This document shows positions 19,712 through 63,499 of a DNA stretch of 64,000 bases, piece by piece. A program made the position numbers and the translations under genes. How positions within the stretch are numbered: position 1 is the first letter of the stretch; each line of letters starts with the position of its first letter. Source of the stretch: Gnetum montanum (Eukaryota; Plantae; Gnetophyta). Below the pieces are notes generated by a model that ran no database searches, had not been told where the DNA came from, and saw only the letters and a program-made list of their open reading frames with translations. The stretch is from the NCBI GenBank assembly GCA_015680685.1, contig MNCI01000551.1, positions 928,985-992,984 of the forward strand. Direction: 5' to 3'.

Positions 19712-19834
19712 TCTTTTAGGCTTAAGGAGGTCAATCTTCGAATGATCAAGTATCCTTTGTCCTTTTTCATTTATATGGATAAAATCTGCATAATCTCCGT
19801 CCCACACAACATCGCCATCGGACACAAAATAATC
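19712..19834 (-). CDS. Kir exon e (DYFVSDGDVVWDGDYADFIHINEKGQRILDHSKIDLLKPKR)
   Basis: Acceptor aaatacag|GAT and donor AGA|gtaagt, phase 0. Matches the Kir C-terminal 'DI.W...Y.D....IDY..F....P' block. The downstream terminal exon is not resolved. Confidence 0.85.
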
Positions 19835-22800
19835 CTGTATTTTGCAAAAAAAAAAAAAGATAAGATAAAACATAAATTTAACAACAGCAATAATGAATGG
19901 AATATTGATTACAGTTATGAACAAAAGCACACCATTCAAGCTTAAACACTAGCTTGCAGTTGCTAAATTTGGAGAACAATAATTCAACGCTAGAAGATTA
20001 TTCATTATTTGTTTTCCATTCAAACTGAGAGCAGACAAAAGCATTGCTAAATGTGCGTTTCATGTTTTTTTACACGGAAGAATAAGAAAGATAAATTCCG
20101 GTCACAAGCCACAAAACTTCCATACTTGGTGATTGCTTGAAATTTCTAGATGATTATTGTTTTCCAAAAAAAAACAAGATGAGTAGCCAGGTAATTGTAA
20201 GTCGGATGGTGTACAAAATCAAGCTACAATAAGAAGACTTGCGAAGTTAGTCTTCAATGAAGTTGAAAAAAGTGATTTGAAGATTCTCTGTAAAAGACTG
20301 TTTCTGAATAAAATAACCAGTTACGAGGAGTTGAAATTCTAGTGGAAGAAATAATACTTGTCTCAATGTCGGTATTTCTTACGTAATATTATTTTTAACG
20401 GACTTTTAGTTCCTTTGTTACTTAGCTACGAGATTTAAAATAACTGTCACATGTATGGCTAAAAACTAAGTTTTGCAACCATTGATCATCCATAATTAAA
20501 TTGGGGAGACAGAATAACCATTTATTTCATGAAATCCTGATCTTTAAAACATACTTTTGAAAGCTAATTTTAATTACTTGCCTACTTTCTCATTAAAATA
20601 TTGTCAAATACAAGATAATCTGAGAATTAAAAAATTCATACTTTCAACAAATACCATATACAAATCGACATACCTCCAAGTGAAATATTGATTGCATTGA
20701 TGATCTTTCTAATCCCATTACTGTTAGAGAAAAAGAGGCATCGCCTTCATCTAAGGTTTCCATTGTATGCCCATATAATGGGCTCTTTTTGTCAATGATA
20801 TGGCGTACCATAAGTCCATAACGAAGATATGACACCTGGAATGTTTGAAAACCACAAATTATTGAAGAATGCATATTTGACTGCTGAGTTGATATTAAAA
20901 AAATTGGTTTAAAAAAATTCAGACAGCTACAGACTTGTGTAATCAACACATTGACAATAATGAAACTTAGGCAAAGCGGGAAAGCTAAATAACTAATGTT
21001 AAAAATTTTCGAAAGAGAAAAACCGTGAAATCTTAAAAACAATATCAACTTGATCTAAAAAGCTATAAATGTGTAGGATTGACATACATCTTTCATGTCG
21101 CAACAGAATGCATGAATCCTAGATTGTACAAATTTCCAAGCTACTGTTTTATGTCTACGTATAATAACATTGTAGCAACCATTTTCTTTCTTTCAAGGAG
21201 CCCAGTAAATTAATATCTGTTTTAACTTATACTGGAAAATATTGTTGAACGTTAGTAAGTAAGCATAACGCAAAATATGCAAGATTATAGTGAGGGCAGA
21301 AAGGTCTTCTGAAATGATAACTCCCGCTGGAGATGTCCCAGCAATAAGTACATGACGTTTGAAATAAAAGAAATATTTTAATTTTAAAAATTACACATCT
21401 TGATGAAATATTGTAAATTTTTAAAAATTACATTAATGTCCAAAAAAAATCAGGAATGCTAAGGCAGATGTCAAGTGTCACTAGAAAAGATTGAATGAAC
21501 AATTCTCTTATTAGGAAAAGTTTGGAACTGGCAACCATCATTGGAAAGATAAAGGAAAGTAGTTTTAAATGGTTTGGTCATGTGCAAAGAAGACCAAAGA
21601 TTGCACCTTTTAAAAGATGCTGATTAATTGAATTAGACCAAATCATACCTGACATGTGAAAATAGAGAAGGATGTCTAAGATTTGGGTATTAACATTGAT
21701 TTGCCTCTTAACAGAGCTGAATAGTGGAAAATAACTCATGCAGCTGACTCAATGTAGTTGAGATAATGCTAAGATGATGATGACAATGATGATGGATGCC
21801 CAAACAATTGTTCATTGAATGACAACCTAAGTCAAATGTATCTAAATATGTGAATTTGAAACTAGCTATGACCTGCATCACTAGACCGTATTCCAGTAAT
21901 TTCTTAGATAACACTAGTAGCATTGCTAACCGTGGACCTGGAAAATTAGTATACACATTGAAAACCTTACAACCAAATCACCTATAGATGAACCTCCAAG
22001 CACTCATTAGCCAGGAGGTGTAAAATGCCTTGCAGCAGGACTCTACATCTTTACAAATAATGCCTATAGTGATGCGAAGCACAGCTCCATGCTCTGCCCT
22101 TGATGTAGCAGTGTAGCATGAATCCCTACATCAGGATGATCCTGTATCATAAGCACATTTTTACATTGGGCCCCATGTTCCAAACAATGGGTTAGCATCC
22201 AGATAGGTTGTACCCATCAAGACAATGGTGACCAAATGGCTTAGGAGATCTTACTAAAACATAGTCTCTCTAGTTTGCAAGGTTGCAGTGGCAGCATTAC
22301 AGGACACTCAGAAGTCAAGGGAACTAGGTTCAAATGATGTGAAAATGCATCACCGGCAACTGATCAAACTAAGATCCCCTGACAGGAAAAGGGCCCCTCA
22401 TATGGACATTATATTCTTTAAGAAAAAAAAGAATATTGTATATAGGTTTATGGCTAATGTGTTTAAGCACTGGAGATTTAGATAGTGTTTTATAAGGTTC
22501 ATCACCTAGAGATTCAATGCTCATCCTCCTAAAGCAGACGGTCAGTGGATGAATGAAAGCCTAACCTTTCTCAAGTGGCTGCACCCACGCTCAAACTCAA
22601 GTCTTATGACTTAAGAAACAAGTACCTTACCATCACTCCAAGTGGATCCCTTAGACATTGCTTTATGATATATGAAATTTCCATCTATCTATTTTTAAGG
22701 TTAGAAAAGGCTGTCTAAATTGGGAAAATATAATGAAAATTTTTGAATCTTTGATTTAGCAAATATCATGCACAGAACAGCAGAAAAATTTTTCCTTGAT

Positions 22801-25800
22801 TTCAACATAACTAGCAAAATGAACATATAATTATAGAAGAAGTCCATGGCAACACATGTTGCTAGATAGTCAATGAATTCTACAACAAAGGTATTTGGAT
22901 TGAACAACAAAGAAAATACAAATAATGCAGTCAATCTACAGAAGCTTTCATTCTACAAATGATGAGGCAGCCAAAAAAAATCCCAAATGGTCTAACATTT
23001 CAATGTCCACAAATGGTGGATCCTCAATTGCAAGGATCCACTTTTTCTTAGTTTTTGTCTTCATGTTTGTGGATGTGTTTGTGAGCATACTTTGTTATGA
23101 TGATGTGTATGATTTGGTTCCGATTTGCAGATTTGCCTATGATTTCACAATTATGATGGACTTGAATTGTGTTAACCATGCATTCATGACTTTTGTTGTT
23201 TGATGTTGATTTGCAGATTTACCTATGATTTTATAATTGGGATGAATTTGATTGATGTGCTCATAACCTTTATGAAGAATAGCAGCTCTTGTATGCATGG
23301 GTTGAATGATATGTTGGTGATTAGTTGAATGACCAATTATTCGTCTTTGTGATACTATCCACTAATTTAGCATAAATTAATGAAACAAATGAAAGGATTG
23401 TTGAGTAAAGATGGAGTTGACATGTTATATTATTGCTGAGGTCGTTATATGTCTTGATTGTTCATGTGTTGCATGACCTACCTACATTAGAATAATTTCT
23501 TAAAAAAAATAAAATGTTCTTTATGAACTGCATATATATCAATGCAGCTATCAGGTATCTGATGTACATGCTTTTGGGGAGAGCATGTTGGAACCCATAA
23601 CAATTTGACTACAAGTGCACCTCAAGACATACAGCCAATACCATATGTTAGAAGAATTATAAAGGAATATAATTATGCCTCAAGTGGGACTCAAATTAGC
23701 AGCCTATTCCCTACAAATACTTGTGAAACAACAAGCTAATCAGTTGAACCCTCATGCACATTCTTTGTTGCATGTTCATACAAGTTTTGGATTTGTTATC
23801 TCTAAATTTTGCTATGCCCATACTAACCATTGAGCAATCACATTTGGAAAGAAAAGAAAATGACTCTTTATGTTTTTTTTTTCTTTTTTGGAAAAATGTC
23901 AAGCTATATTAATCCAAAAAAAATGGTTGTACAAGTGGAAAGCGTGGGTCAGCGACTCCATGCCCCAAAACAATACAATTCATTTGGATCAAAATCCTTC
24001 CCACCCCCAACCCCCNAAACATCAACAAAACCCCACACTCCCACAAACCCGGCCTAAGCCACAACACAGCCCCAAGCCAACCAAAGACAAGCAACGCCTA
24101 CCCCATAGGACCCTCAAACCCCACCCTAGCCACACAACCACTAAGCATACACATCCAGTCCTAATCCGTCACCCCCCATAGTCCTACTCTCTGCCTTGGC
24201 TGAGGTCATGGACGGCCCTGTATCCACCGTGGTCTACATGCTCATTAGACTAGGCCCAAACGTCAACCTCTAATTGTTCTCTTCAATGAGCTGCGCCAGC
24301 CCCATTTGATGTTCCACAATCACCACTGCCATCCATCACAAGTCCTAAAGCTATCGAGAAATCACCTCCCTTTGGATTTCAATTCAAAGATTCTCCCACC
24401 GCAGCTGCCATTGCCCCTTCTCCTCTAGGCACACTTGCTTGGTGGCAAGACGACACTCCTCAAAGTGTGTTCGGCCACCATTGGTCTACGCAAGCTCCCA
24501 CTCCCTATCCTTTGAATGGCTCAGCCCCTCATCCCTGTCTGAAGCAGTGCTACGATTTCCCATCTTTGGCATCCTGGCACCCTGTCCATGGCCCCACCAA
24601 TGTTGATAAACCAGAGTTGTTGTCAGGAACACAACCAACACACCTGCGTGCCATAGCACTAGGATTACCCCCGGGTGCCATCTGGGCTACCACCTTTGCA
24701 AGGACTCCCAGAAAAATTGAAGCAGGTTGATGGGGGTGTCGTGGCACATATGCTTCAAGAACATGAAATGGATGCCCACAAGCTTATGTGGGTATCCCAT
24801 CTACACAAAATGCCTTTCAACCAAAATCGCTACCTCCCTCCAAATGCCTTGCAACCCAGATTTCTTGATATGTCCACTAGTCATCCTAGGAATTGGTCCA
24901 TGGAAAAAACCGACCACGTTCGTTTGTGCCCTAGCAACTGGTGCCACCACTTCCTCCTCCGCATTCATCCCTAGCGCAGCAACCAGCGTTGACACCGACA
25001 CCTCAATCTTCCTACCCCAATACTATGTTTCGGTGCCTTCCTAGTTGTCATAGAACTGCTACATGGGCAAGCCCAACTCTCCTTCCAAGCATTTTAGCAT
25101 GTCCACCCAGCCCATCCGCTCGACCAACGCCCATAACTCAGGCTCCCGAGAACTCCATCCAAGAGGGTGCGAAGAGCAAACACTGCTCCATAACTTCTAT
25201 GGCCTCTGCCCACAGTAATCACACCTCCCAGCCAACCGTCATCACTAGAGGAAAAACCTGCCCCTGGAAGACCACAGAATTCGGGCGCTTCCACAGAGTC
25301 CACAACATGGCAAGCACAAAAGAATCCCCGTGACACACAGCCACAAGGGTCACATTACCAAACAGCCAGATTGCCTGAGTGACCCGACACTCCTCAATAA
25401 AATGATCCAACGTTTCAGACGCAACGTGGCAAAACAAACAATTCGCCGCCACTTGAATTCCTCTTGCCCTCTATAGTGACCAAAAACGTAAGCGGCTGGA
25501 ACGTCGAGAGGTCACTGGGCATACAACCTAACCACGGATCTATGCAAGGGCCGTGCTGGGGTAAATGGAAACAGGGTGCCCTGAACGGTCTGGTCGATCA
25601 AACAGGGACTTAATCGGTGTACAATAACCTTCCGTAAACGATCGTTTTAAAGATGTTATGTGCGAGCTGAGCGATAAGCGTCAAACGTAAACCAATGGAG
25701 GATAGTGCAAAATATGAAAATAGCAAAACAAAAATAAAACAGGTTTGAGAGAGAAGGTGCACCGCCCCAAGATCGGGGGATCTGATCTTTGCTTGACTGA

Positions 25801-28800
25801 AGGAGGTGTACAACAGATGGCAGTGCAGACAGGCACAGCTTACAATGAAGCAGTATGGTCACAGCTCCTTGAACTGCTGTCAACAGCTTGCTAACAGGAG
25901 CCTTCTGCTTGCCAGTCTTCTTGCCAAAGCTAATTGCCAGGAAGCCAAAATGCTAGAATGCCAAACACGCTCAAAAGCCAACCACGCTAAAAATGCTAGA
26001 ATCCAACCACAGGAAAGATGAGTCCAAAAGCCAACCTTTTGAACATTGTTCGCCGGGGTATTTATAGGGCCAGGAGTGGGAGAAAAACATAGTTTGGATG
26101 CCACATGTCTTGGGCCCCACGGAGTGCAAACGTGACTATGCCATACTGTTGTGTAATGTCGGATGTAAAACCTGCTACGTTGTGACCATACCATTCAAGC
26201 TACATGTGCCAAAGTCCAGTAAGTTGCCATATTTGTTACAAAGAATGCCAACAATGAATGCAAAGTGGAGCCTGTACTCCAGGACTACGTCTTCTCTGCT
26301 CTTGCGGGCAGGGTCAAGCATAGGAACAACTTTGGGGGCAGTCAGGGAGGGTGCAAAACAAAGCAAACTTGCTGATTTTGTCCTTTGAAGGGATGCCAGA
26401 ACGAGAGTGACCATTGCTAACAAGCTTTGGAGCTAACTGAAGATGTCTTGGGGCTCCCACACAAGTGTTACGTTGTTCACGCTGCCTAGCGTACCGGTGT
26501 AGCATAAACACCCGCACGTTATGCTGCGCTACGCTGCGTAGCATAGCGTAGTCGCCAATCTTGAAAGAAATCTTGCCTGAAAGCCGAGAATACATGTCTA
26601 AGGCCTGGCTAGGCAAGCAACTGCAACCCTGTCTTTCATGCTGAAAAGTCTTGAGACATGCTGAGTTCACCTTGGGACGCTTTGGTGCTTTGTGTTTTTG
26701 CTACGATGTGCAACGTAGCACAACGTAGCAGTCATTGTGACATGAATTCCTGTGTGATCTGCAATGCTTTGTCAAGGAACTTTGCTTGGAGCCAGAGGGC
26801 AAAGTGGGATAGTCAGTCTTGGAGGCCGGAGTGTGGCCAAGTGCAATTCTCTTGCTGGAACCACTTGGCAAAGGAGCCTTCATGTGTTCTATCCTTGCTA
26901 CGATGTGCTATGTTGCATAGCGTAGCACAGCGTAACACCCAGTTTGGCTTGGATTCTGACTCAAGCTTGCAAACGTTTGGTCACGGGATATTAATCATGT
27001 CCTGGCGTGTCAACAGAGCAAACCTGTTTGACGGTTGGAGCATGGGCAAGTGTGCTTACTCCATTAGAGCCATATGAGTAGGAGTATCGTCAGAGTGCAT
27101 CCCTGCTACGCTGTGCTACGCTACGTAGTGTAGCACGACATAGCACTCAAATTGCAATAATTTCTGACAAAACTTGCCACATTTTGTTGTATCATGTTAT
27201 TCATGCATCAAGGGTGAAGTGAGGCATATGCCCTGGAGGGCTGAGTTGTTATCAATCTGCATCTTTTGTACCCATTCAGTTTCCTCAAGGCCTACTACAT
27301 TGTGTAGCGTAGCAGGTTCCTGCAGTTAAAAACTTGCCAAACTATTTCGTTCATCCTGAACACTTTCGGCAGCTCCTAGCATGGTCCTTGGGTAGACCGT
27401 CAGCCGGTTAAGTGTCAAGCTGGGCAAGCTAGAGGGTGTAGCAAGCCTGTCAGCCCGAGAGATAGAAAATTTTCCAGACTGTACGGTCTACCCCCAATGC
27501 CTCTTTCATGCAAACTAGCCTTGTGGCTGGATGCCACATTGACTGTGCCGCAGAGGGCATTGTCTGCACGGTCCAACATGACACCATGCTTGCAAGGACC
27601 CTTGCCCAAATTCTGGGACTACTAAATCATGAGAATCCCAAAATTTATGGTGTTTCAATGGCCCCTCTTTGTTGACGTCTAGAGGATCTGCCCGAGAGAT
27701 GTCAACAAAGAATACAAAACACCATGAAGAACCAGACACCAACATCGTTCTTCAGTGTCCGCTTAGATGACACTTTGCTACATTTGAGAGTGCTGGGAGA
27801 GTGATGTAGGATAGGGGGTAAGGGATGGAGTTGAGGAAATAGGTTCGGGGAAGAAACGAGTGTAAGATGTAATGCTTTGAAAAACTATTGCCATAGTGTG
27901 ATCCCTCGTCAGAGTGCTTATGAGGGAGTCAGCACACATGGGTGTCTTTCTTTGTTAGCCTTTGACCTCTCACCGGAATACAGAGATGGTCAATTTATGG
28001 CCAAAGCGATTGTTAAGTAGCACGTTGTGCCATTTGTTTTAGGCACCTTTGTTTTTTTTTTTTTTTTTTTTTTTTNGCTCTTTTTGCATTTTTGTGCTTT
28101 TCCTTTGCTATACACCCACGTTCACTTGCAAGCAACCTGTTGTTGTAGGACAAATGTTTCCTCCCCAAGATGAGTTGTGTTTCATCCATGTGGGGCTTTG
28201 ACCTACCTATAGATGCTTCCCATGGGGCGAGTTGCATTACGCCCATCATAGACTTGAGGGTTGGGCATGTGAAGAGGCTTTATGTGCATTGGGAAAGCTT
28301 GTGAATGGGGATATGAAAAATTGCAAGTATAAGGAACAGGGGTTAAAGTGGCTGAACGGAAGGATAAAGTGTGCACTCCCAAGTAGCTAAGCTAATCATA
28401 GCGATTACTTCGGAACAATGGAGTGTCTTGCTCTTGTGGCAAAATGCATCTTTGAACGAGGCCATCTTGGTTTGTATCCTGCAAACACAACAAAGAGAAA
28501 ACCAGAAAAACGACCATCAAATGAAGTGAGGGCAAAGTCCTGCTTGCTTTGGACACCGTCAGAGTGGCAAGTGTTGTTGCTAAAGTGTGCAATGTCCAAA
28601 GTAGGAAGGCCAGCATAGATCCTGGCCACGGCAGGTTGGAAAGGGTGGCACCGAACAGACTAGGAGCAGTGGTGATGCAGGTGCTCAGGATTCCTCGCCC
28701 AAGGAAAACATCATGCAGTCTAGCTGCAAGGTGAGAAGCCTAACAGCTGAACGCCTCTTGGACTCGGACGATGGCAAGGGCTGGAGGATGGCAATCTTGT

Positions 28801-52800: not shown

Positions 52801-55800
52801 GTATTAACATCATCAACTTTGATGATAGCCTTCTTAGCACATCTGATAGGTTGTGATGGTTGTGACATGCGTGCAAAAACTGGAAGAGTGAAGCCACAGT
52901 TTTTTGAGACTAATTGTAAATAACATGCAGATATAATAAATTAAATTTAGTTAACAGGTATGATCGTTAGAGATATTTCTTATATCTTGAAACATAAGAT
53001 CCTTCCAGAGATTCTATTAACACTATTTTGTATAACTTCATGAAAAACGTGCAAATTGGATGCTTTTGCAGTGAATTCAAAAAGGTGGATAAAGGCGTGT
53101 TTGGTAATATGCCAAAAAAAATGAAATATATCAATAAGCATGACAATACATTTCAGATGTCCAGGTGAGGGATCAGACTAAACCTTTTACTCAAAACAGA
53201 TGTTTCATTATTGGGCCAGCAAAACATAATTCTATTTGTCCATGTAACATAAATGTTAGATACGATGACACACATCAAACACTTGTGCAAAATATGTCAT
53301 TTATTTGAAAAAGAAAACAGCAAAATAAATTATATCAAGTAAGCATTGCCAAGAGGAAACTAGCTATTAGAAGTAAAAATGAAACCATCTAAAATTCACT
53401 ACTCTGCTTTTTAAAAAAAAAAAAACTATTTCAAATAAATCGTTAGCTTCATTACATATAAATTATATCTAAAAATAATACATAAGATTGGCATAACTAT
53501 TGTCAGAAAATATGGTTTAATGTGAGACCTACAGCAATATATTTAAGTTTTATTATGTGTAAGATCTAAAGTTCAAGTCTTGGTAGTAGCTGGGTAGTAA
53601 TATACCAGTTCTATGCCTTTAAAAACACATTAATGGTTTTCTTCAAGAGTCGTTATCTCTTAAAAATGCAAAATCACTTGTAATGGGTTCTTGGGCCCAA
53701 CTATTATACTATTAAAGAAGGCTTCAACTTTTGAGTTAATGTGATGACTATTTGGATGTTCAACTAAGCAAGACCATGGCCTGCTGAAGGCTTGAGGATT
53801 TATCTTGCGTTCATGAATCATGAATGTATGCATGATGTTCTTGAAAACCTCAATTTAAAAAGATGAATTCCCAGAGTTTGCTGAATTGCGCCTGAAATTA
53901 AGCTTGAAATTTCCAAATTTCTCCCGTTACTATTTTTTGATTCTCTTCACCATTTTCTCTGAATAAGTATCTAAAAAATAAAAAGCTCACAGTGTATACT
54001 TTAATGTTATGGAGTTTGCATTTAAATTGGTGTTAGCATTTTAGAGAAACAAATCCCGTCATAGAGGCTGAAAATCATGGAATTGAGGACAGCTTGCAAG
54101 CAAATATTGGAAAACGCATCTCTCTTAAAGCATTTATCCATATGTAGCATATGAATATTCAATAGAAAGCTCTGGCTGCCTATTTTGCAATGCAAAAAAA
54201 AAAATCAGATCAATCACAGCAAGAGATTGACCTTGTGGTCCAAAAGACCATCCAAGATGTTTATAAGTGACAATCATCCAGTAAACCATAAGGATCCTCT
54301 CATGGAATTGTAGGGGACAAGGTATGCTTCAGTTGTTTAGGAATGGCAGCAATGGATTCTTGTTGGGGATTTCAATCAAAGGCTCTATCCATGGGAGAAG
54401 TTGGATGGTAGTTCTCAGGTGCCACCATGAGCAGAAGATTTCCTAACATTCCTGGAGGATCACAACCTAGTGAATATCAATATCCATGGTTGTCAATTCA
54501 CCTAGAGCAATTGGCCACAGAGACAGGAGAGGGTTATGACAAAGATTGATTAGGTGTGGGTCAGCTCGTAGATCCTTCTGACAAAGGAGGTTATGGCAAA
54601 AGGGCATGAACGACTGGCATCTGATCATTGCTCCATTCTCTGTTGTGTTGGTGAAACCACCCAAGGGGTGGTTCCTTTTCGTTTTGAGCATTACTGGATT
54701 CACAAGCCTTGGCTAAGGCCTTTGGTCAAGAATATTTGGGGGGCCTACACGAAGAATGTAGACCCTCAGGAGTTTTTGAAGCAAGGACTGTATCACCTCA
54801 AACAAGAGTTGAGGGCATAGATTGTGGCAGATAAATATTCATTTGTCAGGGCATAGATTGTGGCAGATAAATATTCATTTTGGACAATACGGGGCGAATT
54901 CCTGCACTATCCTTCAAAAATTCAAGCTCAGCAGGAGGCAGGAAAGGATTTGACCAAAATGGAAGGCGTTGTTTTGATACAGGAGTTAAATAAGGACACA
55001 GAGGCATATTGGAGGTAGCAGGGTGGACAAAGGTGGTTGAAGGATGGTGACAGGAATACACAGTTCTTCTTTGCAATGGCCAATTCTGCAAATCAGGCTA
55101 AGAAGATTCAGTCTTATTGTCCAAGGTCAAGAAGTTAATGATCAGCAAGGGGTGGCTAATGCTCTTCTTAAGTTTTGGTCAGGAATTTGGGGGGAAAAGG
55201 CTGTGCTTCCTCTTTCTATTCATGTTCAGCAGGTTCTGACCGAGGACGACAGTCAGAAGCTTTTAGTGCCTTTCTCACAACAGGAGTTCGAGGAGGCTCT
55301 GGATTCGATGAAGCCAGGCCGAGTGCTTGGGCTAGATGGCTGGCCTATGGAATTCTTTAAAGCGTTCACTAATATTCTAGGAGAGAACCTACTGAACACG
55401 TTTAACAAGATGCTAAGATGGAAACAGGTGCACAAGGAAATTAATTGTTCACAAATTATAATGATACCAAAGTCTAATTGCTCAATTGACCCATCACAGT
55501 TTAGACCGATTGGGGTTTGCAACTCCCTATTACACCTTTTTACGAAAATGTTGGTGGGGCAACTGCACCCTCTTATGCCGAGATTGGTGAGTTCTGACTA
55601 GGCAGGTTTCATTCGAGGTAGACGCATCCAAGATCAGATTCTGCTAATGCAAGAAGTAATGCACTCACTAAGACTTGTTAAATACCTAGGAATGTGCCTC
55701 AAGCTGGATATTTCGAAGGCCTATGATATTGTTGCTTGGGAGGCATTGCAAGAGATTATGCTGAGAAAAGGGTTCTGCCAAGCTCTGCATTAAGATTCAG

Positions 55801-58800
55801 GCTTCAGGGGCTTTCTCCCTTAATCTTGAAGGGAAATTATGGGGGTTTGCCTCCCTAGGAAGGGGGTTAAGGCAGGGAGATCCACTGTCCCCCTATTTGT
55901 TTATCCTGATCATGGACACCATGCAAACATATTGAGAAACCAAGGGGGTGAGGGGGTTGGAGATTGCAGGTACCTATGCTTGATGAGTTGTCATGGTGAG
56001 GTACCCAGCAAGTCCCACATATGGTCAAACACTATGCCGATGATACCATGCTATTCTCTTAGGTGGCTTTGCCGCAGTCTTTGGCAATTAATTGGGCACT
56101 GCAGCAAATGGGCGGGGGAGATTGGTCTGGAAGTTAATAGGGATAAGTCAACGATTCATATGCAACACATAGAAGCCCAAGTCAAGGGGTTGATTATCCA
56201 GCAATTAGGGATTCTACCAAGGGTACAGAGTGACTTGTACTTGGGTCTTCCTCTATACGATTGGCACTAGGAGAAGGTTTTGGAGGGACTTATACAACGG
56301 CTTCAAAAACATATTCATCATTGGACGCGCCATTTGCTCACCAAGGTGGGTAGGGCGTTACTTGCTACAATGGTGTTGTTGGCAATGGCTAGGTATGTGG
56401 TTGCAGTGGCCTCACCTCCAACTAGTTTCATTGAGCGCATTAACCAAATTGTTCAAAATTTTACATGGTCTGGAGGTAAGGGTGGGAAACGACTACACTT
56501 GGCTAAATGGGATGTGGTGGCCCGGCCAAGGGGTGTAGTCAGCCTGGGGGTTGCCATGTTTCAGGACCTTATCGATATGGGATACCATAAACTCGTGAAT
56601 CAAATTACAAGGCTGTGTCATCATCAAGCACAATGGGTTAGCATAATTGATGGAAAGTATCATAGATGGGAGGTGGGGGCTGAAGTTTCGCATATCTGGA
56701 AGAAAATTTGTGAGCATGCTTGAAAAATGATTTAGTGGGACTTGTTGGGTACCTCACCATGACAGTTCATCAAGCATAGGTACCCAAACGTGGGTGGTTG
56801 GAAGGCATTATAGAGAGGTAAGTTGTTGGAAAAGACAAAAATGTTCATTTGGCTGATAAAACATCTCACCTTACCAGTTTGAGCGGTGTTGCTGTGGTGG
56901 GGGGTTAATGTGTCCAACATGTGTCCCCTTTGCATGGCAACGAGGGAGATGATCGCCCACTTTATATCCAATTGTACTTTTACATGTTGAGTTTTTCAGT
57001 CTGCAAATTTCTGACCAAGTTTGAATCTAACGGGCGACAAGAAAGCGGTGGCAATTTTTTGCACACTATGGAAGGCACAAAATTGTCGAATTTCACAAGA
57101 TCTACCTTTGCCACCACCAGTGCACATTGCAATGCAAGGTAGCCGTTTGTAGGCCAAAGCACAAGTCACCATGGGGGTAAAGCCAACCTTTGAGCCAACA
57201 AGCAATGAGTACAAGGCTAATCCTATGCTATGCAGTCTTATTACCCAGGTTGGGTGGGCAAAGCTCCTTCCCCTATTGCAAGGGGAGCCGAACTTGGAAG
57301 ATGAATCATTTTTTATGAATTGGCTAGGGGAGCTCACCTTGTTCAAGGGGGGTGAGAATTCTACTGACAGAAGATAATATTGCACGGCTTTTAGGGGTGC
57401 TGGTGGATGGTGCGATGGTTCTTGTGTGGGGGCACGGGTTGCAAGATGCAACCACGTTTTTCCCAAGGCTAATGCCCAAACCGAGTGGGCAAGTTTTAAA
57501 GTCGATGTTGCTTGAGCTGTGGTAGGACATAGTGGAGGTGGTTGAGCAATTGTTTGTGCAATCCAACAATGTTTCAAAGTTGCAAGACTTGCACTTCTCA
57601 TTTCTACAGTGCATGTAGACAAGTGCTCAAGTTAATCTACCAAAATATTTTTTGGATGTGCTCAAGAGGCAACACCGGGGATGTCACTCGGGCCTAATTT
57701 TGGCCTTGTGGCATGCTTCAGGGACGAGGGTTACGTAGCCTGATGCAAGCCCGACTATTCAAAGGGTTTATGAGCACCAGCGCTCATGGTGTGAGGTGCC
57801 ACTCGTGGTTGATCTATCAAGTGATTCAAAGGATGGGGCCTCTAGGGCCTGCTTGGAGGAGATGGCCTTGGATATGTTAGGGGGCGTTGCTAGTCCAAGT
57901 CATAAGAGTCCATCCCCAATGCAGAGGGAGGGGGAGGAGGAGGAAGAAGAGCTTGCAAGGGATGGTGGGCTAAGGATTGAGCTGGAGAATGCTGCGCTGA
58001 CCAAGCCTCAGGAGGCTTAGTCAACGGGAGCTCACGAGGGAGGGGGGAAGGTTTCTCATTCTACAAGGGTGGAGACTCTTCTTGTTCAAGTGGCAGTGGA
58101 GGCACAAGAAGTGGAAAGGGCTATCTGGCTGCGTCGCTAGGGTGAACGGAAGATAGATTTTAGGAGGCAACTAGAGGAGGTGATTTGGGAAGAACAACGA
58201 CGACATGCTCTAGCTAAAGCCATGGCTAGAGATGTGCTAGAGGTCAAGCTACGGGAGACTATGAGGAATCAGCTCCAACAAGAGGCATGGCTTCGTGAAT
58301 TGCATGGGAAGGAGAAATAGGAGAAACACGCCAAGGAAGAAGAGGAGGCTACATAGATTCAACGTCAACTGGATTGTGCCCATGAGCAAGGTGTGCATAT
58401 GTGGTTAAGGCAGGGACACTACCCTTACATGGTGCTAGACATTGGGCGCAATACTATGTGGCATGCACTCAAAAGACATATCAAACTTAAAGGGTTTGAT
58501 CTCCACCCAAATGGAAAAGGGACAGTTAAGGAACGTGCCAAAAAGGTGGAGGCGTTCAAGTCATTCCAAAAGGCTACTACATTTGTAGATTTGGAAAAAC
58601 ATAGGGATGTGCTAGATCTCATACATGCCCAAGAGGGGGCTTTTTGCACCTACACTCAACTACCCAATCGATTATAGGTGGTGTTGGGGTTGCGGGGAGG
58701 TGATGGAGGTGGTTCTTTTGATTTTTGTTTGTTTGATGTTCTAACGTCCACCCCTGTGGGGACGAAGTCTTTTTGGTTTTGTTGTTGTTGGTTTCTAGTG

Positions 58801-61800
58801 GCTAATTCTATTGCAAAGGGTTTATGAGGGCACATGAGTTGCTCTTTCTTGTGGGTGTTGTTGGGAGGTCTGGGGACTTGGTGGGTCAGCTCTTTTCCTC
58901 TAGCCCTTGTTTTGAGTGGTTCTGAGGCGAGTTGGGGGGTGTGGGTCAAATTCTCTGGCTCCAAGTTTAACTTGTGGATGTGATGTACATAATTTTACTA
59001 TTTTCTAATATAATCCCAAATTTTTTCGAAAAAAAATTGAGATATTAATAATGCAATTAGGGGTGTCCAAAACAGCTAAAACTAAAATTGGAGTTTCTAC
59101 AATAACTTTTCTATCCAAGATCTCCCATGTACCATGTCCATTTTTCATGTGCAAGTAATCATTAGAAGGTCCTTCCTATATCAACTCTTCAACCTTTATT
59201 CTCAAACAAAAGGCCTCAAAATCTTGACACCGTCTTTACCATAATAGCACATTCCTAACCTCAATTTATAGCTTTTAATCCTACTATTTTTCAGTTTTCT
59301 CTGCCAGCCAACATACTCTTTCTAGTTTGTTTTTAGTTCATTCAAATATTCAAAATTTCTGTCCGTCCAAATTTAAAAGGTCACATGATCTAGCACTGTG
59401 CTCCAATTTTTATTAGTACATCATTTCTACCAATCCTTATGCAAATTACTACCAAAATCTTTCTATAATGTTGGTTTGTCTTTACCCAAACTTTATGCCA
59501 GATTTGACCAATTGTAGGGAATTCATTTCATTTTTATTTCTTTTAAAATATCATCTTTCCTTCACCTTTGGTAATCACCTTTTACTTGGATGTATTTCAT
59601 CCAAACAGACATGATCAATTTCTTGGGAGCCTTAGGTTTTACGTATCCGACCATGCATGATGGTATTTTATCACCTTTAATACTTCTTCTGTAGCAATAT
59701 TGCAACTACATGATCTTCAAATATGCTCACATCTTGTTCTTTTTTGGGGAATTGGCACAGGATTCTAAGACACCGTAGGTTCTTCTGTAATTATATGTAG
59801 GTTTTTCAATACCATCAAACTGAGAAGGATTCCTGAAAATTTGCATTTCATGGTCTCTTAAGGAGAAAGACATTTTGTTTTGCCAATCACTACTGAAGTG
59901 CAGTGAATTTTTAGTTCATCGTATTAGCAATCCTGTAAGCCAAAATCTTTGAAAAGCAAAGAAAAATATATTATTTTTTAAAAAATCAAAGTATATTAAT
60001 TAAAATAGGAACCACAAGCACCTTGATTGGATCATCCAGATAAGTCAGGACAAGCCATCTAGTTTTCAAGGACTCGGTCATTTCTTTTAAAGTTAATTCC
60101 AACGTACACTGAAGCCTTACCATCTTGGTATGTCTATCTACACAATATCATATATCTAAATAGTCAATGCAGATTAGAATAATTAAAAATTAACAGTAAG
60201 TTAAATTTATACCTATGCCTCACTCCTCTATCACGCAAAATACTATGGTATACTTAGCACTGTTTATCCTACAACATATGTAATTGCCCATAGAAGAAAA
60301 CCTGTGGGATGGACAGCATTGATTATAAAGGATATAACCTTGTAAAAAGAATATGAAATGAAATGAAACCTTATTATATCCAAAGACCCATAGGATCTAT
60401 TGGATAGATATTACATTTTCATGAAAAATAGAAATAGACTCTACAAATTGACCAAACACCAATGAGGCATCAAAAACAAATCATATAGGTTTTTTGTTGT
60501 AACATTTTAACTCTATCTCAAATGGGTAGTATACCACAAGAAAGAAATACATGTGACTCATCTTCAAGGGCTCCTGATTTGCGCAACCTACAAATGTGCT
60601 CTTCTCGGGGGAGTTGAATCCATCTTCCACTTCCAATTCTAAGATGATGAGAACTTAAGCAAAGCTTGCTGATAACATTCTGATAATTGATGGCAATGGC
60701 AGCTGAGAGATAGTGAGCTTCTACATCTAGTTTATTAGATCCAATGTGAAGTAAATAAAATTGTCTCTTGCCTTCCACATTAGTCCACATCCATGTTAAA
60801 ACCTTTTGTTTAACTAGTTGGTGAATATGCTTAGGATTTTGTTGTATGTCCTCCCACGAGATATTCCATTTTCTCAACCATTGCATCCCCTAAAAATACC
60901 AAGCATGGTCTCATGAATCCTTCAAAATTACTTTAGAGAATTTGTCCTACCTTGAGATATGCAAGCTATGAGTGTATGTAATAAATTGACACAAGGCTTC
61001 TACTTCTAAAGGTAATAAATTATATTCACATAATAACATTGAGTAAGGTGTGGTTATTACCAAAGGCAAAGGTGAGTGGTCTGGCTGCCACCTTGCCAAC
61101 CCAAGGGCTTTCAAAGCACATGCAAACCCCATGCCAAAAACTTGCATGTGGTTCTTACTAGGGTGTATGCTGCAATTTCAGTGAGATTGTCATGAGCAAG
61201 AGCAGATTTTGTTTTGATTTAGTTATTTTCCTTTTCTATACAGTTGTCACTTGCCCAAGTGCCACACATGTCACCAAAGCAATTATTATAAAAAGATCAA
61301 AATCTGTGGTCACCCATCTGTTGCAAAAGAAAATTTTTAGTAATTTAATGATTATAGTGGTAAAATTATTTATATCCACACTCCCCTTCCATTTCAACCC
61401 TGGTTAAAAATATTGCAGGTTAAAAGTTGCAAATTTTTAAATTATTATTTTCTTTAATGAAGGAAAAGACATGCTAATAAAGCTCATACTCAAATCATTG
61501 TTTTTGGTTCCTGAACTTGGAATTTGTATAATACAAAAAATATGTCCAATATGCATGTCAATTAAATAAACATATTCAGAAACCAACCACATTCCTCGAT
61601 ATAGAATAGAAACCAATGCAGGAGGAATTTGTAAAATCCATATGTTTGTTCCAAAACGGGTTCATGAATAGAAATAATATTTTCTTAGCTCACCAGCTCC
61701 ACTTAGAAACACAAAGAGAAACTGTGCCAAGAGTGTATTTAAATTTGCCACAAGGAGGCAATATGGTGAGACAGCAACGACTGGAGATCCACCAAAAGTT

Positions 61801-61815
61801 GTAGAAAGAGACAAC
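19712..61815 (-). CDS. Inward-rectifier (Kir/KirBac-like, IRK family) channel gene, partial; 5 exons in window, N-terminus not found here
   Basis: Spliced product xLSLSTTFGGSPVVAVSPYCLLVANLNTLLAQFLFVFLSGAVFARMSQPSQPIRCAKKAII...VLAIRL...QDLELVRSEVSYLRYGLMVRHIIDKKSPLYG...GLERSSMQSIFHLEDY...VVWDGDYADFI...LDHSKIDLLKP. All introns are GT-AG and phase-compatible, and there are no stops in 222 codons. Confidence 0.9.
20674..20835 (-). CDS. Kir exon d (VSYLRYGLMVRHIIDKKSPLYG...IFHLE)
   Basis: ttccag|GTG and GAG|gtatgt, 162 nt, phase 0/0. Contains the Kir hallmark H.ID..SPL.G and the G-loop region. Confidence 0.92.
21440..21795 (+). mobile_element. RTE-clade LINE 3' fragment
   Basis: IGKIKESSFKWFGHVQRRP motif followed by a GATGATGA-type tail. 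Confidence 0.7.
25472..27657 (-). repeat. 3' LTR (2186 bp)
   Basis: Direct repeat of 42337-44552. Minus-strand termini are TG...TA. Confidence 0.93.
27658..27673 (-). promoter_or_regulatory. Polypurine tract
   Basis: Minus strand CAAAGAGGGGCCAT immediately precedes the 3' LTR. Confidence 0.75.
29110..29352. repeat. Tandem array of ~30-bp TAGTTTAAGGTC-type units downstream of integrase
   Basis: About 8 degenerate units. The same core occurs at 32327-32470 and 37646-37920. Confidence 0.8.
29396..32322 (-). pseudogene. pol: N-truncated RT, RNase H, additional (archaeal-type) RNase H, integrase
   Basis: ICIDFQDLNKA..KDDFPLP, SFMDGFLGYNQI, MPFGLKN, *VDDI, YLATSD, HFDGAS..TNNVAEYE..QGDAQLV, VTDNGPQF, YYPQANGQVE and WEGPF, with stops and frameshifts. 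Confidence 0.93.
32327..32470. repeat. TAGTTTAAGGTC tandem array at the RT truncation point
   Basis: Three to four ~41-bp units abut the truncated RT N-terminus. Confidence 0.75.
32625..32632 (+). promoter_or_regulatory. TATA box of the antisense gene
   Basis: GGCTATAAATAGGGG lies ~130 bp upstream of the ATG at 32764. Confidence 0.65.
32764..37468 (+). pseudogene. Antisense, multi-exon (~8) retrotransposon cargo gene: NIF/FCP1-like HAD domain, plant-transposon-protein-like domain, acidic and coiled-coil regions
   Basis: Donors at 32884 (gtaagt), 34308 (gtgagt), 34655 (gtatgt), 35792 (gtaagt), ~36113 (gtgagt) and ~36409 (gtacgt), mostly with matching pyrimidine-AG acceptors (two appear mutated). 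Exon 33855-34307 reads PVLIVLEVVGVLC...GARDFLEFLLRHFSVIVWS...NTLYIARH...FQNPPGT. Stops are mostly single transitions. Confidence 0.75.
37646..37920. repeat. TAGTTTAAGGCCATTTCGGGCC tandem array (26-29 bp units)
   Basis: About 8 units between the antisense gene's 3' end and the gag-PR stop. Confidence 0.85.
38190..41651 (-). pseudogene. gag-protease of the Tat element
   Basis: LPQFTKYNGEGDPNAHL...FAMSLTGKALDWY (retrotransposon gag), FCVYHQLCGHNTDYCLALK, and VHVDDGAATNVI...FNLILGR (protease). Confidence 0.9.
42316..42332 (-). promoter_or_regulatory. PBS-like sequence
   Basis: Minus strand (GTTTT)TGGCACTAGGAGGGCC directly follows the 5' LTR and resembles Tat-lineage PBSs. Confidence 0.6.
42337..44552 (-). 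repeat. 5' LTR (2216 bp)
   Basis: Direct repeat of 25472-27657, with an expanded (GCGTAGCACG)n array at ~43981-44030. Confidence 0.93.
48250..48920 (-). mobile_element. L1 LINE 3' fragment (zf-RVT)
   Basis: WLCKVVVPKHRTF...CGQCHQEKEAIHHALFTC...FW. Confidence 0.75.
52244..52391 (-). CDS. Kir exon c (VLAIRLVLGG...QDLELVRSE)
   Basis: cttgtag|G GTG and GAA|gtaagt, 148 nt, phase 2/0. DLELVRSE corresponds to KirBac DLKLVRNE. Confidence 0.9.
52768..52879 (-). CDS. Kir exon b (FARMSQPSQPIRCAKKAIIK...EKL)
   Basis: cttccag|TT and AG|gtaatt, 112 nt, phase 1/2. FARxxxP is the post-TM2 C-linker of Kir channels. Confidence 0.9.
54200..59036 (+). mobile_element. L1-type LINE related to the 23875-47459 copy, with an internal EN deletion and a long 3' extension
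   Basis: RILSWNCRGQG at ~54290, then ASDHC, PFRFEHYW, GLDGWPMEFFK, KLDISKAYD, LRQGDPLSP, YADD, WSGGKGGKRLHL and zf-RVT. A-tail at ~59029-59036. Confidence 0.88.
60430..61150 (-). mobile_element. Non-LTR retrotransposon C-terminal fragment (RTEX/L2-like)
   Basis: KLCLSSHHLRIGSGRW..LPREEHIC...EDESHVFLSC motif. Confidence 0.7.
61694..61815 (-). CDS. Kir exon a: pore helix end, filter (TTFGGS) and TM2
   Basis: ctagcag|G TTG and GCTG|gtgagc, 122 nt, phase 2/1. The hydrophobic helix ends SGA and joins V-FARM in exon b. Confidence 0.88.
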
Positions 61816-62235
61816 CTGCTAGGACAATTCAATACATAAAAATTTAACATGATATATAAGATCATTTCAGATGCGCAAATAGCAAGTTACAAAAGCAATA
61901 ATGAAGAAATGAAATCATGAATAAGATCCAATCATGACTTAAGATGCTTTGAAAAGTTTAATAGACTTGTTTTTTGGATTCACAAAATTTGGCAAGTTGT
62001 TCAATTCAAAACTGTTTTTTTTTTTCAGGTCTTATACAAACAACTAATATTCAGGCTTATCATGCTTCTCACAATTTTTTTGAAAAATTATTCAAGAACA
62101 ATTAAAAAATAAAAAAAAAATCCTAACTCTTTAGGACATGAATGAGTACAAATCTACCAAATGTCAATGATAAAAATAAAACAGTCCAAAGCGTGTAGGG
62201 CTATACAGACTTGAACCTTGGTAAAACAGAATAAT

Positions 62236-62920
62236 CCTCCTCCTCCTCCTAGCCTTATCCCAATTACATGCATCAGCAATATTTCAACCATTCACTTCTA
62301 TCAAGAGTCAAATAAGCATTAATGCACAAATCTTAGATATCTTTTGTTAAGCTTGCAAGCATAGAGGTGAATGGCAAAAAAAGAGCTCATGTAGCCAACC
62401 TCATTCTGTTGGAACAAGGTCAGGATGATGATGCTGCTACTTGCAAACCAAGCATATTTACGTCTACCTCTTTATTGTTTCCCCTCAACTTTAATAAAAA
62501 AACATCTTCGAACAAGTATATTATCTAGTCTTCTTAGCACAACCAAACTATCTCAGACAACTTTTCTTAATATTCTTCTCATCTATGGGCGCTACCCCCA
62601 AACTTCACCTAATAAGAGAGGAGTTAGAATCAATCTTTCCTGCTGACACCCAACACTCACCTTAACATTTACACTGCTGCCACATGCACACATTGAATCT
62701 AATGCTTTTTGATAGGTCAACATTCTACACCATAAAGAATCACATGTCTAATAGCAATTTTGTAAAACTCTCCCTTCAACCTAGCAAGGAGTCTTCTATC
62801 ACACAGCACACCACTAGCTTCCCACCATTTCATTTATTCTGATTCAATTACTTTTTTATCAATTATTTTTAATCTAACCATCCATTTGAACAAGTGACCC
62901 CAAGTATTTGAATTCCTTAA
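62236..62920 (-). mobile_element. Decayed RTE-clade LINE 3' fragment containing a short opposite-strand RTE-type tail (~62340-62440)
   Basis: Minus-strand FKYLGS- and WFG-like remnants with a (GGA)n tail. The short plus-strand piece ends GATGATGATG. Confidence 0.5.
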
Positions 62921-63499
62921 TCGAAGTGTTTTTACTTAATGACTTGAGCTTTTTTAAGAACCTAATATGCACTTATTTCATTGATATTCCATGATTAAGG
63001 ATCTTTACTTTAAGAAATACTCATATGGCTTTACAGTAAATTTGATCACTCATCAAATTCAATATTCAGTCTTGGAAACTGAGAGAGCTCAAGGAGTGGT
63101 ATGGGAGAATCTTCTGAAGGTCTGCACACTTCGGGCCCATTGAGTGACCTATTCAATCCTGAAACTCCAGGTTTTAGTGCTTTGAGAGGCATCCCTAGGC
63201 ATGAAGAGAAACAGAACAAACATTTTGTTGCAAGATGAAACCATGTAGACACAGCAAAGGCTTGGTCATGGTTCCTCTAAACCTTGATTAGGGAAAAAAG
63301 GAATCACAGAGGAAGGACAAAAATCCTAACCCTACAACCTCAAACAATGGATTCAAGATGGGTGGATCATGGATTGCCAACACACTGCAGTGGTATCCAG
63401 ATTTTCAGGCACTACACACACACTAGCAAGCATTCTGGCAGAGAATGAGGTGGTCCAACAGGTTGGAAAAGACTTTCAAACCACCAAATCAAAGGAAGT

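What the first reader, a model, noticed from the sequence alone, without database searches (positions are those of the whole stretch)
19712..61815. A spliced KirBac-like inward-rectifier channel gene in a plant genome
Seen: five small exons spread over 42 kb join in phase into pore-TM2-C-linker-cytoplasmic domain, stop-free while the neighbouring TEs are full of transition-derived stops. Known: FARxxxP, DLxLVR, HxIDxxSPLxG and the C-terminal W...D...IDY block define Kir/KirBac channels. Arabidopsis has no true Kir; its 'Kir-like' KCO3 derives from TPK channels. From my recollection of KirBac1.1, the filter-to-TM2 spacing aligns without gaps and lacks the Arg/Cys linker of animal Kirs. Inference: a little-characterised plant Kir lineage closer to the prokaryotic type, which ORF-based annotation would easily miss.
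Basis: partly seen in the sequence, partly recalled or inferred. Interest (0 to 1): 0.9.

Follow-up and report, generated by a model that had tools for sequence, protein, structure and literature searches.

The report
Spliced Kir-fold channel gene, odd pore
The window holds the intact back half of a real, spliced plant gene from a barely studied family (known from moss as calmodulin-binding MCamb proteins) that has the fold of bacterial and animal inward-rectifier potassium channels but a different, strictly conserved pore loop, so it is probably a channel but probably not a classical potassium-selective one.

Summary
Five minus-strand exons sit at the stated coordinates. All have ag|…|gt borders, the phases fit, and there are no stops. 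They match Ginkgo protein Gb_15214 residues 277-498 without gaps (185 of 220 whole codons identical). All 65 conserved family positions they cover are kept.

Spliced mRNA-like contigs of relatives carry the same exons abutting exactly. Six genomic contigs of relatives have introns at the same codon positions. dN/dS is about 0.10.

A 64-member family profile hits KirBac1.1 from slide helix to the end of the cytoplasmic domain (E 1.6e-15). The best animal Kir scores only E 5.6e-3. An AlphaFold model of the Ginkgo orthologue matches whole KirBac and Kir chains (Foldseek E 2.6e-23).

Two corrections:
- The pore loop reads TTFGGSP, not TxGYG, and none of the 64 members aligned has GYG. It has the Kir fold but fails the defining potassium filter.
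- The family is not new. [quoted passage not shown] Orthologues are annotated from streptophyte algae to gymnosperms. No angiosperm was seen.

TM1 and the N-terminus lie beyond base 64000, and the last exon was not found.

The parts
61694..61815 (-). Exon encoding the end of the pore helix, the pore loop LSLSTTFGGSPV and most of TM2. It matches Ginkgo Gb_15214 residues 277-316. It starts with the third base of a split codon and ends with the first base of the next.
   Evidence: ag|gt borders. 36 of 40 residues identical to Ginkgo. The acceptor is at the same codon position in genomic contig L006. It abuts the next exon on spliced contigs L001 and L002.
52768..52879 (-). Exon encoding the end of TM2, the linker (V)FARMSQPSQPIRCAKKAII, and a variable loop of the cytoplasmic domain. 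It matches Ginkgo residues 317-354.
   Evidence: ag|gt borders. 27 of 36 whole codons identical to Ginkgo, and the split codon GTT reads Val as in Ginkgo. The acceptor is conserved in L006, L008 and L009.
52244..52391 (-). Exon encoding beta strands of the Kir-type cytoplasmic domain, ending in DLELVRSE. It matches Ginkgo residues 355-403.
   Evidence: ag|gt borders. 41 of 49 residues identical. Both borders are conserved in L005, L006, L008, L009 and L010.
20674..20835 (-). Exon encoding the core of the cytoplasmic domain, including RHIIDKKSPLYG. It matches Ginkgo residues 404-457.
   Evidence: Pfam IRK_C E 0.0049. All 15 PDB sequence hits are KirBac1.1 or KirBac3.1 proteins, the best at E 1e-3. 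68 relatives found among 1.8 billion representative proteins. Borders conserved in six genomic contigs.
19712..19834 (-). Exon encoding the last strands of the cytoplasmic domain (DYFVSDGDVVWDGDY...LDHSKIDLLKPKR). It matches Ginkgo residues 458-498. It ends at a gt donor with no stop.
   Evidence: ag|gt borders. 35 of 41 residues identical. The donor is at the same position in L006 and L011, so a further 3' exon is expected.
52880..61693 (-). Intron of 8.8 kb.
   Evidence: Coordinates follow from the exon borders. Relatives have about 0.3 kb at the same position (L006).
52392..52767 (-). Intron of 376 nt.
   Evidence: Exon borders.
20836..52243 (-). Intron of 31.4 kb filled with retroelement remnants.
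   Evidence: An RT_RNaseH ORF at 31203-31790 (-) and a zf-RVT ORF at 48263-48733 (-). A chromodomain-polyprotein match at 29786-30037. Relatives have 95-190 nt at this position.
19835..20673 (-). Intron of 839 nt.
   Evidence: Exon borders.

Best explanation
The window carries the 3' two-thirds of the conserved core of a functional, spliced nuclear gene. The gene belongs to a streptophyte-wide family of Kir-fold membrane proteins, the family of moss MCamb1/2.

Full-length relatives share one layout:
- a long disordered N-terminus
- a slide helix
- TM1
- a pore helix
- an invariant non-canonical pore loop (LSLSTTFGGSPV)
- TM2
- a Kir-type beta-sandwich cytoplasmic domain

The window encodes everything from the end of the pore helix to the end of the cytoplasmic domain.

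Shown here: the exons, their splice borders and phases, conservation of the intron positions, purifying selection, and Kir/KirBac homology and fold.

Inferred: four subunits form a pore, as in Kir and KirBac channels. Because the GYG carbonyl cage is replaced by FGGS, the pore most likely passes cations without classical potassium selectivity, as in the bacterial NirBac channels and in NaK or CNG-type filters. The cytoplasmic domain together with calmodulin gates the pore during cold, osmotic or ABA stress.

I put identity and intactness at about 0.9 and the channel mechanism at about 0.5.
For: Gene model:
- Canonical borders and fitting phases.
- The exons are collinear and ungapped against Ginkgo residues 277-498, with 185 of 220 whole codons identical. 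All 22 invariant and 43 near-invariant family positions they cover are kept.
- On the spliced contigs L001, L002 and L007 the exons abut exactly. One codon is left over at each of the two split codons.
- Introns sit at the same codon positions in L005, L006 and L008-L011.
- dN/dS is about 0.10 against L001, L002 and L007.

Family and fold:
- Profile A1 hits KirBac1.1 residues 50-314 at E 1.6e-15 and KirBac3.1 at E 3.6e-15.
- IRK_C is found in 53 of 64 members, best E 3.5e-9.
- In the AlphaFold model of the Ginkgo orthologue the core (residues 180-500) has pLDDT mostly 80-97.
- Foldseek's top matches are whole KirBac3.1 and KirBac1.1 chains (E 2.6e-23, target TM-score up to 0.83), followed by Kir4.1, Kir6.2 and Kir2.2.

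Assembly: a four-copy model of the TM/pore domain scores ipSAE 0.47 against 0.00 for the best of 3 controls. That mark was reached by 21 of 30 proteins solved as pairs and 0 of 23 solved as single chains. The runs agree and the partner's pLDDT is 66-67. This pass may come from the model's memory of solved Kir tetramers.

Pore loop: it is nearly invariant across the window's subfamily, from streptophyte algae to gymnosperms.

Precedent and regulation:
- Kir-fold channels with non-canonical P-loops are non-selective (PMC4607889).
- MCamb1/2 are listed as CaM-binding and induced by cold, osmotic stress and ABA (PMC4532166 and PMC8655846, both citing Takezawa and Minami 2004).
Against:
- TM1, the slide helix and the N-terminus lie outside the window, and the terminal exon was not found. 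A break elsewhere in the gene cannot be excluded.
- The Pfam IRK transmembrane model is hit weakly in only 3 of 64 members.
- Exon 4 alone is below the IRK_C gathering score, 17 against 22.5 bits.
- No electrophysiology for any family member turned up in the papers I could search. Ion conduction, selectivity and rectification are all inferred.
- The 2004 paper itself could not be read.
Confidence: 0.75

Rival explanations
1. It is a genuine potassium-selective inward rectifier, a 'true plant Kir'. The unusual pore loop would still form a potassium filter.
For: It has the whole-chain Kir/KirBac fold and sequence homology. The Thr at the start of the filter and one Gly are kept, and the pore helix has the usual length.
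Against: TFGGS aligns with TVGYG. The Tyr and the last Gly of the signature are gone, and none of the 64 members aligned has GYG. In the one tested precedent, Kir-fold channels with altered P-loops lost selectivity (PMC4607889).
Confidence: 0.12
2. The local copy is a dead or dying gene. The five exons look intact, but the gene is broken outside the window or is no longer transcribed, for instance silenced by the retroelements that fill its 31-kb and 9-kb introns.
For: The N-terminal exons and the last exon were not seen. The introns are 30 to 300 times longer than in relatives and hold retroelement remnants. There is no expression data. None of the proteins recovered, many of them on short transcript-like contigs, is close to 100% identical to the window.
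Against: There is no stop or frameshift in 222 codons. All ten splice borders are canonical. All 65 conserved positions are kept. dN/dS is about 0.10, although that value averages over both lineages. Very long TE-filled introns are normal in genomes of this kind (general knowledge).
Confidence: 0.1
3. It is a Kir-fold membrane protein that no longer conducts ions. It would act as a calmodulin-binding sensor or scaffold, with the pore loop kept for structural reasons.
For: It lacks the canonical filter. No conduction data were found for any member. Relatives have long disordered N-termini of 200-500 residues, which would suit a scaffold.
Against: The strongest conservation in the whole family lies exactly in the pore helix, pore loop and TM2 (invariant positions 278-320). 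That is what a working permeation path predicts. The tetramer model packs pore helix against TM2 as in channels.
Confidence: 0.15

Closest known systems
[quoted passage not shown]
   Same: Same family. The moss protein P0084 aligns with all five window exons (176 of 238 aligned residues identical). It has the same LSLSTTFGGSPV pore loop and TM2. It sits in the same 90% cluster as a direct hit of exon 4.
   Different: It comes from a different lineage, moss against a gymnosperm-like genome. The moss genes have short introns. Calmodulin binding and stress induction are reported for moss only and were not tested here.
KirBac1.1 and KirBac3.1 (prokaryotic inward rectifiers; PDB 1p7b, 2wll, 1xl4)
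   Same: Same layout of slide helix, TM1, pore helix, TM2 and beta-sandwich cytoplasmic domain. The family profile scores E 1.6e-15 over KirBac1.1 residues 50-314. Filter-to-TM2 spacing is ungapped. The motifs FAR..P, DL.LVR, H.ID..SPL.G and W...Y.D are shared.
   Different: The filter is TTFGGS instead of TVGYG. Identity is only 17-20% in the structural alignment. The plant proteins carry a long disordered N-terminus. The gene is eukaryotic and spliced. No prokaryotic genome holds the family's signature motifs.
NirBac channels (Zubcevic et al. 2015, PMC4607889)
   Same: Kir/KirBac fold with a non-canonical P-loop. This is the functional precedent that such pores conduct cations without selectivity.
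   Different: They are bacterial. Their P-loops differ (TTGTD in NirBac2.1; NirBac1.1 and 1.2 are unrelated to any known filter). I did not test whether they are specifically related to the plant family.
Animal Kir channels (KCNJ family: Kir2.2, Kir4.1, Kir6.2, GIRK2)
   Same: Same overall fold (Foldseek E 1e-17 to 4e-19, about 320 aligned columns).
   Different: Sequence similarity is much weaker (best E 5.6e-3, cytoplasmic domain only). There is no GYG. The basic cluster after TM2 that binds PIP2 in animal Kirs reads SQPS here (my reading of the sequence, from memory of Kir2.2).
Arabidopsis KCO3, the plant 'Kir-like' channel
   Same: Only the informal label and a two-TM, one-pore topology.
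   Different: KCO3 belongs to the TPK family (PMC8619664). The present family has a Kir-type cytoplasmic domain and no TPK-type domain hits.

Membership tests
Kir/KirBac superfamily (TC 1.A.2; Pfam IRK + IRK_C) | Beta-sandwich Kir cytoplasmic domain (IRK_C) | tested here: met
   Window exon 4 alone scores IRK_C E 0.0049, below the cut-off, and hits only KirBac proteins in the PDB. At family level 53 of 64 members hit IRK_C, best E 3.5e-9. The profile aligns through KirBac1.1 residue 314. The fold is confirmed on the Ginkgo orthologue.
Kir/KirBac superfamily (TC 1.A.2; Pfam IRK + IRK_C) | Slide helix, TM1, pore helix and TM2 membrane domain joined to the cytoplasmic domain | tested here: met
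   Met for the family. The Ginkgo model has helices at 199-211, 215-238, 258-281 and 293-321. Foldseek aligns about 300 columns to whole KirBac chains, and the profile alignment starts at KirBac1.1 residue 50. The window itself encodes only the end of the pore helix, TM2 and the cytoplasmic domain. Pfam IRK is hit weakly in only 3 of 64 members.
Kir/KirBac superfamily (TC 1.A.2; Pfam IRK + IRK_C) | Potassium selectivity filter T-x-G-Y-G | tested here: not met
   The window reads TTFGGS, and TFGGS aligns with TVGYG. Subfamily A members read TTFGG[SA]P or close variants, and subfamily B reads STGL-QPE. None of the 64 has GYG.
Kir/KirBac superfamily (TC 1.A.2; Pfam IRK + IRK_C) | Homotetrameric pore | tested here: inconclusive
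   Four copies of Ginkgo residues 195-326 score ipSAE 0.47 against 0.00 for the best of 3 controls. The mark was reached by 21 of 30 proteins solved as pairs and 0 of 23 solved as single chains. The runs agree and pLDDT is 66-67. The pass may come from memory of solved Kir tetramers, and it was run on the orthologue, not on the window's protein.
Kir/KirBac superfamily (TC 1.A.2; Pfam IRK + IRK_C) | Inward rectification by Mg2+ or polyamine block | not testable with these tools
   This needs electrophysiology.
MCamb family (moss calmodulin-binding transporter-like proteins) | Sequence orthology with AAT00626.1 across the conserved core | tested here: met
   P0084 aligns to all five exons, has the same pore loop and TM2, and shares a cluster with the exon-4 hit P0012.
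MCamb family (moss calmodulin-binding transporter-like proteins) | Calmodulin binding, and induction by cold, osmotic stress and ABA | not testable with these tools
   Reported for moss only, and seen here only through reviews. A Chinese fir drought transcriptome lists a protein of this name among its responsive genes. A candidate basic helix (A..RW.R....V) upstream of the slide helix in relatives lies outside the window.
NirBac (prokaryotic non-selective Kir-fold channels) | Kir/KirBac fold with a non-canonical P-loop | tested here: met
   This is a likeness in kind. The P-loop sequences differ, and specific relatedness was not tested.
NirBac (prokaryotic non-selective Kir-fold channels) | Non-selective cation permeation | not testable with these tools
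   This needs flux assays.
TPK/KCO3 'Kir-like' plant channels | TPK-type pore domain with a GYG filter and no Kir cytoplasmic domain | tested here: not met
   No TPK or Ion_trans_2 hits in any of the 64 members, while IRK_C is present. KCO3 is placed in the TPK family by PMC8619664.

The most novel reading that the evidence does not exclude
The family defines a distinct class of eukaryotic Kir-fold cation channels. It runs from Chlorokybus and Klebsormidium to gymnosperms, and none of the 83 relatives recovered came from a flowering plant. Its invariant TTFGGSP pore loop would give it a selectivity unlike any characterised filter, for instance non-selective or Ca2+-permeable. Calmodulin would gate it during cold, osmotic or ABA stress. 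If so, non-flowering plants keep a stress-signalling channel type that angiosperm-centred plant physiology has never examined.
Probability: 0.35. Interest if true: 0.7.

Novelty: new member of a known kind. Interest (0 to 1): 0.45.

Why it matters
Plant ion-channel inventories are built on Arabidopsis and crops, and there 'Kir-like' means the TPK-derived KCO3. This gene shows that a gymnosperm-like genome keeps, under strong purifying selection, a member of a real Kir-fold family. That family runs from streptophyte algae to gymnosperms and did not turn up in any flowering plant.

The pore loop is almost invariant across the window's subfamily yet is not a potassium filter. No member seems to have been recorded electrically. 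That makes the family a cheap and well-defined target: express a Ginkgo, Physcomitrium or Marchantia orthologue and measure selectivity and calmodulin dependence. It would also be a natural eukaryotic counterpart to the bacterial NirBac channels for studying how the Kir scaffold tolerates a new filter.

For annotation, 110-160-nt exons separated by 9-kb and 31-kb TE-filled introns are easily missed or split in genomes of this kind.

Tried and rejected
- Exon-by-exon Pfam: only exon 4 gave a hit, and a weak one. Exons 1 and 3 gave nothing in PDB sequence searches. Single exons are too short, so I moved to natural full-length relatives.
In one search a script did concatenate the exon DNA, only to count stops per frame, and printed only the counts. 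Every later step was exon by exon. The fold and complex jobs used the natural Ginkgo orthologue.
- Upstream exons: neither a motif scan nor tblastn found anything in 61816-64000.
- Terminal exon: only a weak candidate near 19058-18990 (E 1.6). Its frame does not fit the nearest AG acceptor, so I rejected it. Reading through the exon-5 donor would add 28 residues and then a stop. That is possible, but the conserved donor in L006 and L011 argues against it.
- Prokaryotic origin: a scan of 185,579 prokaryotic genomes with the family's most conserved motifs found no relative. The weakest exon-4 hits I looked up were again streptophyte algae or unnamed.
- Species identity: a search with an intronic RNase H ORF returned only unnamed fragments at 35-48% identity. 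The species stays unknown. The closest family members are gymnosperm proteins at about 82-84% identity.
- Literature: searches for Kir in bryophytes, lycophytes or streptophyte algae found only the KCO3/TPK usage. The 2004 MCamb paper is not held.

Full report
**1. The observation**

I translated the five proposed minus-strand exons in all frames. In one frame each they read:
- exon 1: LSLSTTFGGSPVVAVSPYCLLVANLNTLLAQFLFVFLSGA
- exon 2: FARMSQPSQPIRCAKKAII, followed by a loop
- exon 3: a beta-rich stretch ending in DLELVRSE
- exon 4: VSYLRYGLMVRHIIDKKSPLYGH...
- exon 5: DYFVSDGDVVWDGDY...LDHSKIDLLKPKR

Every exon is preceded by ag and followed by gt. The lengths are 122, 112, 148, 162 and 123 nt, so the phases fit: one leading base, then two split codons that read GTT (Val) and AGG (Arg). 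The reading frame has no stop in 222 codons. The coordinates in the finding are exact.

Exon 5 ends at a donor without a stop, so at least one more exon follows. Nothing resembling the upstream part of the protein lies between 61816 and 64000. The gene therefore runs off the right end of the window.

In one search a script concatenated the exon DNA only to count stops and printed only the counts. All later work was exon by exon or used natural full-length relatives.

**2. What the gene is**

Exon by exon, only exon 4 reaches Pfam (IRK_C, E 0.0049, below the gathering score). In the PDB, exon 4 hits only KirBac1.1 and KirBac3.1 proteins.

A phmmer search with exon 4 against 1.8 billion representative proteins gave 68 relatives. 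The best are 78-87% identical. They include full-length proteins of 500-800 residues in which this exon lies near the C-terminus.

Their sources:

| Group | Species |
|---|---|
| Gymnosperms | Ginkgo, Taxus, Cryptomeria |
| Ferns | Adiantum, Ceratopteris |
| Lycophytes | Selaginella, Diphasiastrum |
| Mosses | Physcomitrium, Ceratodon, Sphagnum |
| Liverworts | Marchantia, Riccia, Calypogeia |
| Streptophyte algae | Chlorokybus, Klebsormidium, Mesotaenium, Spirogloea, Closterium |

No angiosperm appears among the 83 hits.

The five window exons are collinear and ungapped with Ginkgo Gb_15214 residues 277-498. Of 220 whole codons, 185 are identical. All 22 invariant and 43 near-invariant family positions that fall in this range are kept. 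The closest relatives are gymnosperm proteins and unnamed proteins on short transcript-like contigs, at about 82-84% identity. None is near 100%, so the species is not among them. Notes by other agents on this genome also call it gymnosperm-like.

**3. Independent support for the splicing**

I therefore used exon 4 to fetch related metagenome contigs, which gave 11 loci.

Five loci (L001-L004 and L007) carry the protein uninterrupted, like mRNA. On L001, L002 and L007 the window's exons abut to the base. Exactly one codon is left between exons 1/2 and between exons 2/3, which accounts for the split codons.

The other six loci (L005, L006 and L008-L011) are genomic. They have short introns (95-730 nt) at the same codon positions, bounded by ag and gt. 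After exon 2, the donor reads gc in L008 and L009 and lies elsewhere in L005 and L006, where that exon's variable loop differs in length. The donor after exon 5 is also conserved.

Nei-Gojobori counts, made per exon and then summed, give dN/dS of about 0.10 against L001, L002 and L007. The gene model is therefore conserved across species and under purifying selection. What is still missing is RNA from this species.

**4. Relation to Kir channels**

A 64-member alignment (A1), searched as a profile against PDB sequences, gives:
- KirBac1.1 at E 1.6e-15, over residues 50-314, that is from the slide helix to the end of the cytoplasmic domain
- KirBac3.1 at E 3.6e-15
- the best animal Kir (Kir4.1) at only E 5.6e-3

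IRK_C is found in 53 of 64 members. The IRK transmembrane model is hit weakly in only 3.

An AlphaFold2 model of the Ginkgo orthologue has a confident core (residues 180-500, pLDDT mostly 80-97). It shows a slide helix, TM1, a pore helix, TM2 and a beta-sandwich domain. Foldseek's top matches are whole KirBac3.1 and KirBac1.1 chains (E 2.6e-23, target TM-score up to 0.83, about 300 aligned columns). Animal Kir4.1, Kir6.2, Kir2.2, Kir7.1 and GIRK2 follow.

A four-copy model of the TM/pore domain passes its controls. The ipSAE is 0.47 against 0.00 for the best of 3 controls. The mark was reached by 21 of 30 proteins solved as pairs and 0 of 23 solved as single chains. The runs agree and pLDDT is 66-67. 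The contacts run from the pore helix of one subunit to TM2 of its neighbour, as in potassium-channel tetramers. This pass may reflect the model's memory of solved Kir tetramers.

**5. Where it departs from Kir**

In the profile alignment TFGGS lies on TVGYG. Across the family there are two main pore-loop types:
- the window's subfamily has LSLSTTFGGSPV, nearly invariant from streptophyte algae to Ginkgo, with Marchantia reading LITSYGGSPV; a small group of more distant moss and algal members keeps TTFGG but continues [TA]RVEA
- a second subfamily has SLSTGL-QPE

None has GYG. The defining potassium filter is therefore not met, although the pore helix, pore loop and TM2 are the most conserved part of the protein.

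The one tested precedent is the bacterial NirBac group. These are Kir-fold channels with altered P-loops that conduct Li+, Na+, K+ and Rb+ alike (PMC4607889). From memory, TTFGGSP also resembles the shortened TTIGETP filter of animal CNG channels. That is a lead, not a test.

I infer a tetrameric cation channel without classical potassium selectivity. Selectivity, rectification and gating are untested.

**6. What was already known**

[quoted passage not shown] This is the MCamb1/2 family of Takezawa and Minami (2004). Two reviews list it as calmodulin-binding and induced by cold, osmotic stress and ABA. The paper itself is not held. A Chinese fir drought transcriptome lists a protein of that name among its responsive genes.

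UniRef auto-names many orthologues 'Inward rectifier potassium channel C-terminal domain-containing protein'. The plant potassium-channel papers I could search use 'Kir-like' only for the TPK-derived KCO3. They do not discuss this family.

The lineage is therefore on record but essentially uncharacterised.

**7. Verdict**

- It is a real spliced Kir-fold gene, nearer to KirBac than to animal Kir.
- It is not a canonical potassium-selective Kir.
- It is not a new lineage.
- The window holds only part of the gene.

It is a new member of a known, poorly studied family. Interest is moderate. The open question is what this strictly conserved non-GYG pore conducts, and why flowering plants appear to lack it. 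That question is directly testable.

Noticed in passing
alignment A1 (proteins P0137, P0139-P0144, P0146-P0148, P0031, P0032, P0036, P0038, P0047, P0155): A second, ancient subfamily has a one-residue-shorter pore loop, SLSTGL-QPE(L/V).P. It is found in Klebsormidium, Spirogloea, Sphagnum, Selaginella, Diphasiastrum and Adiantum. No seed plant was among the hits. Many members carry long apolipoprotein-like helical N-termini.
   Followed up: partly
window 20836-52243 (intron 3) and 52880-61693 (intron 1): These introns are 30 to 300 times longer than in relatives and hold retroelement remnants. There is an RT_RNaseH ORF at 31203-31790 (-), a zf-RVT ORF at 48263-48733 (-), and a chromodomain-polyprotein match at 29786-30037 (-). 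GC content rises to 45-50% over 24-48 kb, against about 33% around the exons.
   Followed up: partly
L008:928-935 and L009:812-819: In two related genomic contigs the donor after the exon-2 equivalent reads gc instead of gt, at the conserved position. These are probably GC-AG introns.
   Followed up: no
relatives only, about Ginkgo P0003 residues 114-135 (outside the window): A basic motif A..RW.R....V is conserved upstream of the slide helix, in an otherwise disordered N-terminus. It is a candidate for the calmodulin-binding site reported for the moss proteins.
   Followed up: no
window 18990-19058 (-): A weak similarity (E 1.6) to the C-terminal tails of gymnosperm relatives lies 650 nt downstream of exon 5 and ends in a stop. 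Its frame does not fit the nearest AG acceptor, so the last exon remains unidentified.
   Followed up: partly
proteins P0009, P0016, P0065, P0029: Some hits match exon 4 in two to four separate stretches or are very long (914-1789 aa; Closterium). These may be tandem Kir-domain repeats or fused gene models.
   Followed up: no
L001-L004, L007 (JGI metagenome records Ga0247516, Ga0316042, Ga0181514, Ga0315919, Ga0233340): Environmental 'metagenome' records hold spliced, mRNA-like copies of this plant gene. L001 and L002 match Ginkgo residues 2-524, nearly the whole protein. This suggests plant transcripts in these samples.
   Followed up: no
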